DNA of 64,000 nucleotides from Octopus sinensis. Its lineage: Eukaryota. Positions 5,816 to 9,153 of the stretch are shown here, piece after piece (position 1 is the first letter of the stretch; the number at the start of each line of letters is the position of its first letter). Location: assembly GCF_006345805.1 (NCBI RefSeq), contig NC_043017.1:24862001-24926000 (forward strand), read 5' to 3'. A program made the translations under genes and the position numbers. The notes under the pieces were generated by a model. It saw only the letters and a program-made list of their open reading frames with translations. It was not told the origin of the DNA and searched no databases.

Positions 5816-6324
5816 TGCTGAACAGATGACATAAGAGTAGTCGAGGTGCCTGTTTGACTGTAGCAGCTAGTGAAAGGGCATTCTTTCATTCAGAAGTGGT
5901 TTAGGTATCTGTCCCATATTGAATATAATAGGGCTGTGGGAAAAGGAACAAGGTATTGTTAGAACACCATTACAACGTTGTTATAGCTTGTTCTTGTTTC
6001 CACAGATTTCATTGTGATATAAGCTTCTCTCTCACATTTTAATATATTTCTGTTTTGTTTAGTTACTCTCTACAGAAACTGATTTGCTCCAAATATATTG
6101 CTGACACATGGCTTCTCTTCTCTGTCAATATGTCCAAGTCAGGTTAAGCAACTGATTTCAAGAGAAGGATTTTCCAAAAATATCTCATTGATATGGTTAC
6201 ACTTTTGTATGGAGATGTTTGTCTGGTAGTTGAAAATTTCTAGACAAAAGTTCACCTCAAAAACCACAGGTGTACAGCTCCTCTGCTCTGTGAAAGTATT
6301 GGTGATTAGACAAGGTATTTATTT

Positions 6325-6685
6325 GGCGCGAGCATGATCGTTGCCAGAGCAGCCAACTGGCTTCCATACCCGTGGCACGTCAAAGGGTACCATTCGAGCG
6401 TGATCGTTACCAACGTCGCTTCACTGGCACCTGTGCCAGTGGCACGTGTAAAAAGATTCGAGCGAGGTCATTGCCAGTACTGCCTGACTGACCCCTGTGC
6501 CAGTGGCACGTAAAAAGCACCCACTACACTCTCGGAGTGGTTGGTGTTAGGAAGGGCATCCAGCTGTAGAAACTCTGCCAGATCAAGATTGGAGACTGGT
6601 GCAGCCATCTGGTTTGCCAGCCCTCAGTCAAAATCGTCCAACACATGCTAGCATGGAAAGCGGACGTTAAACAATGATGATGATC
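6325..6685 (+). mobile_element. RTE 3' UTR copy (subfamily variant)
   Basis: ggcacgtaaaaagcacccactacactc...gaagggcatccagctgtagaaac...(gat)n. Confidence 0.8.
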
Positions 6686-6749
6686 AAGTCCCACATATGT
6701 CACAGTGATCTGGCTTCTTTCTTGTATGAGTGTGTTTATTTAGAGTTAA

Positions 6750-6979
6750 CCCTTTTGTTACTGTATTTATTTTGAGATGCTCTGTGTTTCTTCCAATTAT
6801 TGTAAATATAACAAAGAATTTAGTAAAATAATATCGTTATCATTGAGCTAGTGTTAAGAACATAAATTGTGACAAAGATTTGGTGGAAGATTTGAATTCA
6901 AAGCTTATGAAAACAAGACATTTGTACTAAAAAGCCAGAGCCGGTTTAAGCCGGTAACAAGTGGTTGGTAACAAAAGGG
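6750..6979. mobile_element. piggyBac-type MITE (second copy 43566-43787)
   Basis: TTAA-CCCTTTTGTTAC...GTAACAAAAGGG-TTAA. Confidence 0.8.
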
Positions 6980-7256
6980 TTAAGCTAATACTGTGAGAGA
7001 ATAACTTCCCACAGATAAGTGATATCGCATGTCACTAGTCTCATCACCATTTCATGTCCACTTAAATATTGTCGACAAGATGATGTAACAACGATATTGA
7101 AGAGAAACGGTCTCTCTGCTCCACAAACATATCCGAGATTGTTAAAAGCACTTAAATGAGAGAATGAGCTCCCACAGATTTCACACTGATATGGCTTCTC
7201 ACCTGTATAAATATGTTTATGCTTAATTTAGATACCAACTCTAGAAAACAATTTGC

Positions 7257-7675
7257 GAATCTTTTCGATTTGAACGGCAGTTTTTTCTATCGGTGTCATA
7301 TGAAATTGTCATCTATAATTATGACCCTAGAATCGATCTATTGCATTTCAATCTCTTTTAGGGTTAGGGTTAGGAGTGGGGGGAAGGGTATCTTTTTTTC
7401 TTCACAAATGTAAATAAACCCAATCTGTTTCTTAAACGAGGGACATATTCATACGGCACAGAATGTTTTTTACCTCAATAGACGTATTTGATTGGTTGAA
7501 ATTGCAGAAATTGAAGAAAGAAAAAACAACAAATATCTTACAAACTATAGAATTTTCTCAATAAAGCCAAGAGAAAAAGATGTTTTATAAACACATTCTA
7601 CCAGTATACAAAGTTTAAAATTTTTTAGTTACCTAGAAATTATGTTAAAAACTGCAGTTCAAACCGAAAAGATCC
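7257..7675. mobile_element. TIR element with GGATC-type ends, 8-bp TSD and internal TTAGGG repeats (Merlin- or hAT-like MITE)
   Basis: CAATTTGC is duplicated at 7249-7256 and 7676-7683. TIRs read gaatcttttcgatttgaacggcag and ctgcagttcaaaccgaaaagatcc, with tagggttagggttagg inside. Confidence 0.7.
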
Positions 7676-7801
7676 CAATTTGCCACAGATATCACAGTGA
7701 AATAGTGTCTCTCCTGTATCAAATCGTTTACGAGTATTTAAATGACCTCCTTCAGAATAAGATTCGTCACAGATATCACTGTGAAATGGTTTTCCTTCTA
7801 T

Positions 7802-8224
7802 ATCAACATCAATAGAAAATGTAGCTGTGATACCAGTGCCAATGGCATGTAAGAGAACCATCCGAACATGGCCGTTGCCAGCGCCGCCCCGACTGGCCTC
7901 TGTGCTGGTGGCATGTAAAATGCACAGTCCAAACGTGGCCGTTGCCAGCCTCATCTGGCCCCCGTGCCGGTGGTACGTAAAAAGCACCATCCAACCGTGG
8001 CTGTTTGCCAGCCTCGTCTGGCACCTGTGCAGGTGGCACGTAAAAAGCACCCACTACACTCACGGAGTGGTTGGCGTTAGGAAGGGCATCCAGCCGTAGA
8101 AACTCTGCCAGATCAGACTGGGCCTGGCGCAGCCCTCTGGCTTCCCAGACCCCAGTTGAACCGTCCAACCCATGCTAGCATGGAAAACGGATGTTAAACG
8201 ATGATGATGATGATGATGATGATC
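7802..8224 (+). mobile_element. RTE 3' UTR copy with three to four internal units of about 60 bp and a (GAT)n tail
   Basis: Ends ...ccaacccatgctagcatggaaaacggatgttaaac(gat)n. It interrupts the fossil zinc fingers. Confidence 0.85.
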
Positions 8225-8664
8225 AACATATTCATGTTTAATTAATTCACTACTTCAAGAGCAAGATTTACCACGGATATTGCAATGATATGGTTTTTCT
8301 CTTGTATGAATCTGTTATTGCTTCTTGAAGTGAACATGATGAATGATTTGCCACAGCTATAGACCAATAAGGCTTTTCTCCTGTGTGAATACGTGTGCCC
8401 TTAGCTTACTTGGAACTGAAAAATTGATTTACCACATATCACAGTCGTATGGTTTCCCTCCTGTATGAATATGTTCACGAGTATTTAAGGTACCCCTTGT
8501 AGAAAATGGTTTACTACAGATGCCACACTCGTGTGCTTTCTGTCCTGAATGAATACATTTGTGAGAATCTGAATTATCCCTTGTAGGAAACGACATACCA
8601 CAGATATCCCAATAGAATTGTTTATGTCCTGTAAGAAAGTATTCATGAGTATTTAAGGTACATT

Positions 8665-9115
8665 ATCATTGTTTAACGTCCGTTCTCCATGCTAGCATGG
8701 GTTGGATGGTTCAACTGGGGTCTGGGAAGCCAGAAGGCAGCGCCAGGCCCAGTCTGATCTGGCAGTGTTTCTACAGCTGGATGCCCTTCTTAACGCCAAC
8801 CACTCCGTGAGTGTAGTGGGTGCTTTTTACGTGCCACCGGCACAGGTGCCAGACAAGGCTGGCAAATTGGCCATGATCGGATGGTGCTTTTTATGTGCAA
8901 CCGGCACGGAGGCCAGGCGAGGCTGGCAACAGCCACGAACGGATGGTGCATTTTACGTGCCACCGGCATGGAGGCCAGCCGGGGTGGCGCTGGCAATGGC
9001 CACGTTCGGATGGTTCTCTTACGTGCCATCGGCACTGGTATCACAGCTACAATTTCCATTGATGTTGATCGATTTCGATTTCGATTTTCACTTGCCTCAA
9101 CAGGTCTTCACAAGT
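8665..9115 (-). mobile_element. RTE 3' UTR copy, inverted relative to 7802-8224
   Basis: Reverse complement of the same family. Removing it restores finger 17 (KSE-TLNTH). Confidence 0.85.
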
Positions 9116-9153
9116 AGAGTTTCACTTTTAAAAAATACTTTACCACAGATATC

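What the first reader, a model, noticed from the sequence alone, without database searches (positions are those of the whole stretch)
5960..9153. About 3 kb fossil zinc-finger array behind the stop codon, with decay increasing with distance
Seen: the functional ORF ends at H-TGA-D-I-C-G-K, so the first Cys codon of finger 17 is a stop. Roughly a dozen further fingers can be traced downstream. They are clearly readable near the stop and barely recognisable near 6 kb, and are cut by at least five TE insertions (three RTE ends, a piggyBac MITE and a GGATC-ended MITE). Inference: the gene once had about 30 fingers and shortened, possibly stepwise by successive upstream nonsense mutations, leaving old coding DNA as 3' UTR. 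This is a readable record of birth-and-death dynamics in the octopus C2H2 expansion.
Basis: partly seen in the sequence, partly recalled or inferred. Interest (0 to 1): 0.7.

Follow-up and report, generated by a model that had tools for sequence, protein, structure and literature searches.

The report
Dead zinc fingers behind octopus gene
An octopus zinc-finger gene that now makes 16 fingers is followed by the decayed remains of 16 more, cut off by a stop codon and later invaded by five mobile elements; this kind of relic is already known from mammalian zinc-finger genes.

Summary
A 483-aa minus-strand ORF (10605-9154) encodes 16 perfect 28-aa C2H2 fingers. It ends at a TGA that replaces the first Cys codon of a 17th finger.

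A DNA profile of the 16 living units finds significant matches only on the same strand, between 9160 and 6042, and nowhere else in the 64 kb. Five mobile-element insertions interrupt the tail: three 5'-truncated retroposon ends, one TTAA-flanked piggyBac-type MITE and one GGATC-ended MITE with an 8-bp target duplication. Once they are removed, the tail reads as units 17-32 in the same 84-bp register, with 14 bp of cumulative drift. So it is one array that once had at least 32 fingers, not a separate pseudogene.

Decay rises with distance (rho 0.71-0.81). It fits two age classes: F17-25 with 21% change at otherwise fixed sites, and F26-32 with 36%. Two truncation steps are therefore plausible but unproven.

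The mobile elements are younger than the fossil blocks they sit in. The living ORF is clearly under selection.

Two things could not be tested: whether the tail lies in the 3' UTR, and the state of orthologues. None could be retrieved.

The phenomenon is documented in mammalian KRAB-ZNF genes (ZNF252; Looman 2002). This is a clean new example of a known kind.

The parts
9154..10605 (-). Living ORF: 483 aa, a 33-aa non-finger N-terminus plus 16 C2H2 fingers F1-F16 (10506-9163) in exact 84-bp register. F16 is atypical (C2HC, no TGEKP linker).
   Evidence: Pfam zf-C2H2 290 bits, zf-H2C2_2 422 bits; 63/64 zinc ligands intact
9154..9156 (-). TGA stop codon at the position of Cys1 (codon 3) of unit F17. 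It is one base away from the TGT used at this position in the consensus of the living units.
9121..9162 (-). F17 N-terminal half (FH*DICGKVFFKSE)
   Evidence: after excision F17 matches model 3-82, 29.6 bits
8661..9120 (-). Retroposon copy A, inserted in F17 in the gene's orientation. Family homology runs 9088/9069-8661, with a degenerate (GAT)n tail at 8661. The stretch 9120-9070 (32 bp of unknown origin plus (AAATCG)3) is unexplained inserted DNA, so the 5' limit is uncertain by about 50 bp.
   Evidence: JC distance to family consensus 0.057
8222..8660 (-). Fossil units F17 C-half, F18, F19, F20 (79 nt), F21 (80 nt) and F22 N-part
7802..8221 (+). Retroposon copy B, inserted in F22 between HEYV(D/H) and the linker. 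It lies opposite to the gene's orientation, with a (GAT)8 tail at 8200-8223. It is 90% identical to A over 409 nt and inverted relative to it.
   Evidence: JC 0.040
7676..7801 (-). F22 linker (IEGKP), F23 and the F24 N-part, ending in the first copy of the TSD GCAAATTG (7683-7676)
7249..7675 (.). 419-bp MITE (7675-7257) with about 29-bp terminal inverted repeats (GGATCTTTTCGGTTTGAACTGCAG... / GAATCTTTTCGATTTGAACGGCAG...), plus the second copy of the 8-bp TSD (7256-7249). It is inserted in F24. Removing it restores a 28-codon unit, [27 protein letters not shown].
   Evidence: F24 50.7 bits across the junction; related copies at 22753-23378
6980..7248 (-). F24 C-part, F25, F26 (most degenerate, no profile hit) and the F27 N-part, ending in the first TTAA (6983-6980)
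6746..6979 (.). 230-bp piggyBac-type MITE (6979-6750) with TIR CCCTTTTGTTAC...GTAACAAAAGGG, plus the second TTAA (6749-6746). It is inserted in F27.
   Evidence: F27 33.9 bits across the junction; 87.5% identical copy at 43582-43787
6685..6745 (-). F27 C-part (LNKHTHTRKKP) and the F28 N-part (DHCDICGT)
6332..6684 (+). Retroposon copy C, inserted in F28. It is the oldest of the three. Its limits are uncertain by a few bases because the (GAT)n tail merges with the TCA codons of the finger.
   Evidence: JC 0.180
5936..6331 (-). F28 C-part, F29, F30, F31 and F32 (weakest units: 10.0, 24.2, 6.4 and 1.6 bits). About 130 bp further on, an unrelated dispersed repeat begins (5806-5400). No finger signal lies beyond it.

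Best explanation
This is one tandem C2H2 zinc-finger gene of Octopus sinensis that once encoded at least 32 fingers and now encodes 16.

Nonsense mutations, frameshifts or both removed the C-terminal half from the reading frame. The present stop is a TGA in place of the first Cys codon of finger 17. The excluded units (F17-F32, 9162-5936, minus strand) have since evolved without coding constraint. They have gained stops, small indels and ligand losses. They have also accepted five mobile-element insertions: three retroposon 3' ends and two MITEs.

The 16-finger ORF upstream has been kept intact by selection.

The distal seven units carry about twice the decay of the proximal nine. The most likely history (inferred, about 50%) is two truncations: first near F25/F26, later at F17.

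Shown here:
- the identity of the units;
- the continuity and register of the array;
- the lesions;
- the nature, boundaries and relative ages of the insertions;
- the decay gradient.

Inferred:
- the order and type of the truncating mutations;
- that the tail is 3' UTR.

The confidence given is for the core claim of a single truncated array of at least 32 units with a decaying tail. The two-step detail is held at about 0.5.
For: - Profile hits lie only downstream of the stop, on the gene's strand.
- After the five excisions, units 1-32 lie in 84-bp phase with 14 bp of cumulative drift. Hits span all five junctions: F17 29.6, F22 29.8, F24 50.7, F27 33.9 and F28 10.4 bits.
- Exact TSDs are present for the two MITEs, and other copies exist elsewhere in the window.
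- The retroposon family has a shared 3' end and variable 5' truncation in at least 8 copies.
- Mismatch at 39 columns fixed in the living units is 3.4% in living units, 21% in F17-25 and 36% in F26-32. Spearman p is 0.002-0.0001. The best step is after F25 (permutation p 0.015 and 0.003), and each block is homogeneous.
- Universal finger residues are retained at 87%, 62% and 38% respectively.
- Pfam recognises conceptual F17-25 (zf-H2C2_2 68.9 bits) but not F26-32.
- JC ages of the mobile elements are 0.057, 0.040 and 0.180, against 0.25 and 0.49 for the fossil blocks.
- At the proximal fossil's substitution level the living ORF would carry about 12.7 stops. It has none.
- The fossil block is not collinear with F1-F16, so it is not a block duplicate.
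Against: - Everything rests on one assembly. L001 is the same sequence.
- No orthologue or close paralogue was found to show the intact ancestral state.
- The 51 bp at 9120-9070 next to retroposon A are unexplained. No clear TSD was found for the three retroposon copies.
- The step model is only marginally better than a linear gradient (2dL 16.8 vs 15.0).
- F27 (9/39 mismatches) sits inside the 'old' block.
- Ages taken from 'fixed columns' assume that the fossil units once matched the living consensus.
- The family consensus for the retroposons comes from only 8 in-window copies.
Confidence: 0.88

Rival explanations
1. There was a single truncation event. The gradient exists because the distal fingers were already weakly constrained or degenerate while still in frame, or were always further from the F1-F16 consensus. 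It does not reflect an earlier loss from the ORF. This rivals only the two-step detail, not the truncated-array reading.
For: - The linear-trend model fits nearly as well as the step model.
- The living terminal fingers are themselves the most atypical: F16 has 4/39 and F1 3/39 mismatches at fixed columns, and F16 keeps only 6/11 key residues.
- F27 and F30 are no worse than the proximal units.
Against: - The distal block has twice the divergence, even at universally required residues (38% vs 62% retained, p=0.002).
- Each block is internally homogeneous.
- The oldest insertion (C, JC 0.18) lies in the distal block, and the two young ones lie in the proximal block.
Confidence: 0.35
2. The downstream fingers belong to a separate tandem pseudogene, or to a dead block duplicate of the living finger array.
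For: ZNF genes often lie in tandem clusters. The count of 16 living plus 16 fossil units is suggestive of a block duplication.
Against: - There is no spacer. F17 starts at the base after F16, in phase 0.
- No N-terminus-like sequence is present.
- There is no diagonal in the fossil-versus-living unit identity matrix: offset 0 gives 0.514 against an overall 0.49.
- No other finger array exists in the 64 kb.
Confidence: 0.03
3. The TGA is an assembly or sequencing error, or a rare allele, and the real protein is longer.
For: Only a single assembly is available. No reads could be examined.
Against: - Read-through would add only 21 codons before the next stop, at 9099-9097, in non-finger inserted DNA.
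- Retroposon A splits F17.
- F17 lacks His2, F18 lacks Cys1 and F19 lacks His1. Only 31/64 ligands survive in the tail.
- So the functional end of the array is at F16 whatever the base at 9154.
Confidence: 0.03
4. The whole locus, including the 483-aa ORF, is a dead pseudogene whose proximal part merely happens to be still open.
For: - No orthologue and no annotated close relative was found.
- The exact protein is absent from the clustered protein collection.
- The N-terminus is short and unique.
Against: - 0 of 5000 simulated ORFs stay open at the tail's substitution level.
- 63/64 ligands and all 15 inter-finger spacings are intact.
- No mobile element lies in 1.45 kb of ORF, against five in the 1.33 kb of homologous tail.
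Confidence: 0.05

Closest known systems
Human ZNF252 (8q24.3 KRAB-ZNF cluster): a row of eleven complete and degenerate zinc-finger motifs in the 3' UTR after the stop codon (Lorenz et al. 2010, PMC2865497)
   Same: - A tandem C2H2 array cut short by an in-frame stop.
- Finger-coding DNA persists directly downstream, on the same strand, as a decaying relic.
- Lineage-specific truncation steps are inferred.
   Different: - ZNF252 has a KRAB effector domain and orthologues that document the steps: rhesus intact, human truncated, chimpanzee more truncated.
- Here there is no KRAB domain and no orthologue. The tail is older (21-36% change at fixed sites) and is broken up by five mobile elements.
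Degenerate or non-functional fingers after truncation by an in-frame stop in KRAB-ZNF genes, reviewed by Looman et al. 2002, Mol Biol Evol 19:2118 (cited in PMC2865497)
   Same: The same general mechanism of shrinking a finger array by a nonsense mutation, with fossil fingers left behind.
   Different: It was described for mammals. I did not read Looman 2002 itself, only its citation. The cephalopod C2H2 survey I checked (PMC12513265) has no occurrence of pseudogene, truncation, degenerate or UTR.
Lineage-specific tandem C2H2 expansion of octopods (Albertin et al. 2015, from my own knowledge; PMC12513265)
   Same: A long array of 28-aa fingers with a family-specific core ([11 protein letters not shown]...HTGEKP), encoded in one exon, in a repeat-rich region.
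   Different: This gene stands alone in its 64-kb window, with no neighbouring ZNF. It shows the loss side of the dynamics rather than the gain side.

Membership tests
Tandem C2H2 (Krueppel-type) zinc-finger gene | Repeated C-x2-C-x12-H-x3-H units of 28 aa joined by TGEKP-like linkers | tested here: met
   There are 16 units at exact 28-aa spacing. Pfam PF00096 scores 289.9 bits and PF13465 421.6 bits.
Fossil finger tail behind a premature stop (ZNF252 type) | Finger-homologous DNA immediately after the stop, on the same strand and in the same unit register as the living array | tested here: met
   Units 17-32 lie in 84-bp phase after the five excisions. No such hits occur elsewhere in the window.
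Fossil finger tail behind a premature stop (ZNF252 type) | The tail is non-functional: stops, frameshifts and lost zinc ligands | tested here: met
   There are 11 in-frame stops. Eight units have indels. 31/64 ligands are retained. Only one unit (F28, split by a retroposon) keeps all four ligands.
Fossil finger tail behind a premature stop (ZNF252 type) | The tail is part of the transcript's 3' UTR | not testable with these tools
   No RNA data are available. The only finding is that no AATAAA lies between the stop and 6771, and the first ATTAAA is at 8242.
Fossil finger tail behind a premature stop (ZNF252 type) | An orthologue or relative with the longer, intact array | tested here: inconclusive
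   The whole-protein search gave only generic ZNFs at 60% identity or less. The N-terminus had no hit. The exact-sequence look-ups were empty.
Independent tandem ZNF pseudogene | Its own N-terminal region or a spacer separating it from the upstream gene | tested here: not met
   F17 follows F16 without a gap, in phase 0. There is no collinearity with F1-F16.
Non-LTR retroposon 3' ends (reader: 'RTE ends') | Copies share the 3' end and a simple-repeat tail and differ by 5' truncation | tested here: met
   At least 8 copies all end at the same position, with 5' ends at query positions 72 to 309. The tail is (GAT)n.
Non-LTR retroposon 3' ends (reader: 'RTE ends') | Homology of the 3' end to an RTE-clade LINE (assignment to the clade) | not tested
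No tRNA-like head was found.
piggyBac-type MITE | TTAA target-site duplication and terminal inverted repeats beginning CCC...GGG | tested here: met
   TTAA lies at 6983-6980 and at 6749-6746. The TIR is CCCTTTTGTTAC / GTAACAAAAGGG. A second copy lies at 43582-43787.
hAT-type MITE | 8-bp target-site duplication and short terminal inverted repeats | tested here: inconclusive
   The 8-bp TSD GCAAATTG and the roughly 29-bp TIRs (26/29 matching) are present. The TIR sequence was not compared with any hAT reference, so the superfamily assignment rests on TSD length alone.

The most novel reading that the evidence does not exclude
The fossil tail is retained in the mRNA as a long 3' UTR. Within it, the two young, oppositely oriented retroposon copies (A in F17, B in F22) pair into a roughly 410-bp, roughly 90% complementary double-stranded RNA stem that encloses fingers F17-F22. 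This would make the transcript an ADAR editing or dsRNA-regulation substrate in an animal with exceptionally heavy A-to-I editing. Separately, two-layer 'stratigraphy' of fossil tails might be a general, datable record of how cephalopod finger arrays shrink.
Probability: 0.15. Interest if true: 0.5.

Novelty: new member of a known kind. Interest (0 to 1): 0.3.

Why it matters
This locus gives a well-resolved single example of the loss side of birth-and-death evolution in the octopus C2H2 expansion. The array was halved from at least 32 to 16 fingers, the relic is still alignable unit by unit, and the mobile-element insertions give relative dates.

If a genome-wide scan finds many such tails, they would allow three things:
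- estimating rates of finger loss;
- testing whether truncation proceeds from the C-terminus in steps;
- correcting finger counts and pseudogene calls in cephalopod annotations.

On its own the locus does not change what is known about ZNF evolution. The same phenomenon has been described in mammals since 2002.

Tried and rejected
(1) Orthologue and paralogue retrieval.
- The full 483-aa search was swamped by long generic ZNFs, mostly vertebrate, at 60% identity or less.
- The 52-aa N-terminus shared no words with anything.
- The exact protein is not in the clustered collection.
- The only contig carrying it is the window's own assembly.
- ORFs inside the fossil tail are not on record, so no transcript or second-individual contig could be recovered.
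- Two negative searches already showed that no close relative is indexed, and short finger queries are outranked by summed multi-domain hits.

(2) A control locus. The O. bimaculoides ZFP2 gene (L002) is a conserved-type ZNF with a non-finger C-terminus and no fossil tail. It is therefore uninformative about how common tails are.

(3) A block-duplication origin of the tail was rejected, because there is no diagonal in the unit identity matrix.

(4) Retroposon A as the truncating event was rejected. Its divergence (0.057) is far below that of the fingers it interrupts (0.25).

(5) I looked for TSDs for the three retroposon copies and found none convincing. The 'CAACAT' next to copy B is also part of the element's own 5' end.

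(6) A tRNA-derived SINE head was tested with ARAGORN, which finds none.

(7) Other long ORFs in the window have no Pfam match.
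Full report
**Where the window comes from.** The 483-aa product of the ORF is on record on a single contig, GCA_006345805.1 CM016879.1, at about 24.86-24.88 Mb. To my knowledge this is the Octopus sinensis chromosome-level assembly. The fetched locus L001 is 100% identical to window 1-20605. It is therefore the same sequence and not an independent check.

**The living gene.**
- The minus-strand ORF 10605..9154 encodes 483 aa. 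It has a 33-aa non-finger N-terminus followed by 16 C2H2 fingers at exact 28-aa (84-bp) spacing, F1 at 10506-10423 through F16 at 9246-9163.
- Pfam gives zf-C2H2 289.9 bits and zf-H2C2_2 421.6 bits.
- 63 of 64 zinc ligands are canonical. The exception is the last His of F16, which is Cys.
- After F16 the text reads TSFH-TGA-DICGK.

**Is the tail real and more than chance?**
- I built a DNA profile from the 16 living 84-bp units and ran it with nhmmer over both strands of the whole window.
- Every hit with E<1e-3 outside the ORF lies on the minus strand between 9160 and 6109. There are 13 such hits, scoring up to 56 bits.
- The best hit anywhere else in the 64 kb has E=0.48.
- No fingers lie upstream of the gene, and there is no other ZNF array in the window.

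**The five insertions.**
- *Three retroposon copies.* Three gaps in the tail are copies of one dispersed family: A about 9120/9069-8661, B 7802-8221 and C 6332-6684.
  - The family has at least 8 further copies in the window.
  - All copies end at the same 3' position, carry a (GAT)n tail and begin at different 5' positions. This is the signature of 5'-truncated non-LTR retroposition.
ARAGORN finds no tRNA-like head.
  - Copy A lies in the gene's orientation. Copies B and C lie opposite to it.
- *The GGATC-ended MITE.* The fourth gap is a 419-bp element (7675-7257).
  - Its terminal inverted repeats are about 29 bp long and begin GGATC/GAATC.
  - It is flanked by a perfect 8-bp duplication, GCAAATTG (7683-7676 and 7256-7249).
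  - Related copies lie at 22753-23378.
- *The piggyBac-type MITE.* The fifth gap is a 230-bp element (6979-6750).
  - Its TIRs are CCCTTTTGTTAC / GTAACAAAAGGG.
  - It is flanked by TTAA on both sides.
  - A copy with 87.5% identity lies at 43582-43787.

**One array or two genes?**
- I removed the five insertions, keeping the pieces 10506-9121, 8660-8222, 7801-7676, 7248-6980, 6745-6685 and 6331-5700, and ran the profile again.
- Units 1-17 are in phase 0. The phase then drifts by only 14 bp in total over the next 15 units.
- Every slot from F17 to F32 is hit except F26, which occupies an 80-bp slot.
- The hits now run through all five junctions as near-full-length units:
  - F17, model 3-82, 29.6 bits;
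  - F22, model 1-83, 29.8 bits;
  - F24, model 3-84, 50.7 bits;
  - F27, model 12-83, 33.9 bits;
  - F28, model 2-70, 10.4 bits.
- For the two MITEs the excision is exact. It restores 28-codon units, for example F24 = [27 protein letters not shown].
- There is no spacer and no N-terminus-like sequence between F16 and F17.
- The fossil units are not collinear copies of F1-F16. In the unit-by-unit identity matrix at variable columns, offset 0 gives 0.514 against an overall mean of 0.49.
- The tail is therefore the continuation of the same array, and the ancestral gene had at least 32 fingers. The tail ends at about 5936.
- About 130 bp further on, an unrelated dispersed repeat begins (5806-5400). 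No finger signal lies beyond it, so more units may have been lost.

**State of the fossil units**.
- There are 11 in-frame stops.
- Eight units have indels.
- Only 31 of 64 zinc ligands are retained.
- No unit is functional. F28 is the only one that keeps all four ligands, and retroposon C splits it.
- The first units after the stop are already broken independently of the TGA: F17 has lost His2, F18 Cys1 and F19 His1.
- If the TGA were misread, translation would stop 21 codons later, inside non-finger inserted DNA.
- An assembly error at that one codon would therefore not change the conclusion.

**Decay with distance.**
- I used the 39 alignment columns that are identical in at least 15 of the 16 living units.

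| Set of units | Mismatches to consensus |
|---|---|
| Living F1-F16 | 21/624 (3.4%) |
| F17-F24 | 65/312 (20.8%) |
| F25-F32 | 107/312 (34.3%) |

- The Fisher test between the two fossil halves gives p=2e-4. The Spearman correlation of mismatch with unit index is 0.71 (p=0.002), and 0.81 (p=1e-4) with the 52 columns fixed in at least 14 of 16.
- The best single break is after F25. F17-25 show 21% mismatch (JC 0.25) and F26-32 show 36% (JC 0.49). Each block is internally homogeneous (p=0.80 and 0.18). Permutation p is 0.015 and 0.003.
- A linear trend fits almost as well (2dL 15.0 against 16.8).
- The result also holds for 11 residues required in any C2H2 finger (C, C, F, L, H, H, TGEKP). They are retained at 87% in living units, 62% in F17-25 and 38% in F26-32 (p=0.002).
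- Pfam recognises the conceptual translation of F17-25 (zf-H2C2_2 68.9 bits, zf-C2H2 42.1 bits). It finds nothing in F26-32.
- The gradient is real but not monotonic. F24 is as well preserved as F18 and F19, and F27 and F30 are better than their neighbours.

**Relative dating with the insertions.**
- Distances to a consensus of eight in-window copies are 0.057 for A, 0.040 for B and 0.180 for C.
- Each is well below the decay of the fossil block it sits in (0.25 for A and B, 0.49 for C).
- So all three entered DNA that had already lost coding constraint. In particular, retroposon A, only 42 bp behind the stop, is not what truncated the gene.
- The oldest insertion lies in the older block, which agrees with a two-layer history without proving it.

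**Is the retained half functional?**
- In simulation, at the substitution level of the proximal fossils (p=0.21) the 483-codon ORF would carry a mean of 12.7 stops, and none of 5000 replicates stays open. Even at p=0.05 only 2.8% stay open.
- The homologous 1.33 kb of tail took five insertions. The 1.45 kb of ORF took none.
- The 16-finger ORF has therefore been maintained by selection since the truncation.

**Most likely history.**
- Shown: a single array of at least 32 units. Its C-terminal half is out of frame, decaying and colonised by mobile elements. Its N-terminal half is conserved.
- Inferred, about 50%: a first truncation near F25/F26, followed by a long interval during which retroposon C inserted. 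A second truncation then removed F17-F25, and the TGA at F17 is either its cause or a later upstream replacement. Retroposons A and B inserted recently. The two MITEs are undated.
- Not shown: which lesion was first in each block, and whether the tail is transcribed.
- The sequence offers only a hint about transcription. No AATAAA lies between the stop and 6771, and the first ATTAAA is at 8242.

**Comparison with what is known.**
- Fossil fingers behind a premature stop are documented in mammalian KRAB-ZNF genes.
  - Lorenz et al. 2010 state that degenerate fingers occur 'after truncation by introduction of an in-frame stop codon', citing the review by Looman et al. 2002.
- The recent survey of cephalopod C2H2 expansions that I checked contains no mention of pseudogenes, truncation, degenerate fingers or UTRs (PMC12513265).
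- The present case is therefore a new, unusually legible member of a known kind, in a clade where it has apparently not been described.

**Limits.**
- There is one assembly, no reads, no RNA data and no orthologues.
- The 51 bp at 9120-9070 beside retroposon A are unexplained, and the retroposon TSDs were not found.
- The JC 'ages' are relative and depend on two assumptions. The first is that the fossil units once matched the living consensus at fixed columns. The second is that a consensus from eight copies is adequate.

Noticed in passing
window 9069-8661 and 7802-8209 (minus-strand transcript 9100-7790): Retroposon copies A and B are inverted relative to each other, with arms of 206 nt at 94% and 200 nt at 87% complementarity. 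If co-transcribed they are predicted to form a roughly 410-bp near-continuous RNA duplex enclosing fossil fingers F17-F22, with MFE -856 kcal/mol for 1311 nt. If the tail is 3' UTR, this is a plausible ADAR/dsRNA substrate.
   Followed up: partly
window 9163-9246 (F16): The last living finger is already atypical. It reads [28 protein letters not shown], so the second His is replaced by Cys and the TGEKP linker by TRKTS. It keeps only 6/11 key residues and has 4/39 mismatches at fixed columns, the worst of the 16. It may be under relaxed constraint as the new C-terminus.
   Followed up: partly
window 9120-9070: There are 51 bp between the F17 N-half and the recognisable 5' end of retroposon A. 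This is 32 bp of unknown origin plus (AAATCG)3. One other family copy (18518-18650) reaches into the microsatellite. The stretch could be a longer 5' part of the element or filler DNA. This is unresolved.
   Followed up: partly
window 32725-34081, 34335-34822, 14895-15316, 45730-46969: There are very long (TA)n/(AT)n microsatellites, up to about 689 copies, and a 1.2-kb array of a 26/52-bp TATATACGTG-type repeat. Very low G+C (0.18) and strongly negative GC skew occur around 15.0-16.0 kb.
   Followed up: no
window 27019-27423 and 28508-28901, 54997-55368: Young tandem duplications lie inside dispersed repeats: 135 bp x3 at 95% identity, 196 bp x2 at 90% and 188 bp x2 at 85%.
   Followed up: no
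window 5400-5806 and about 4670-4845: Two further dispersed repeat families lie just distal to the fossil tail. Each has 10 or more copies in the window, for example 48273-48678 at 89% and 39249-39671 at 88%. The window is largely repeats, and the ZNF ORF is its only long ORF with a Pfam match.
   Followed up: partly
window 17701-18396 (+): A 231-aa ORF whose C-terminal part (…RLRWYGHVLWMDEE…GRGRPRKTWDEV…) reminds me of LINE ORF2 tails. Pfam gives no hit, so this is only a recollection and not a finding.
   Followed up: partly
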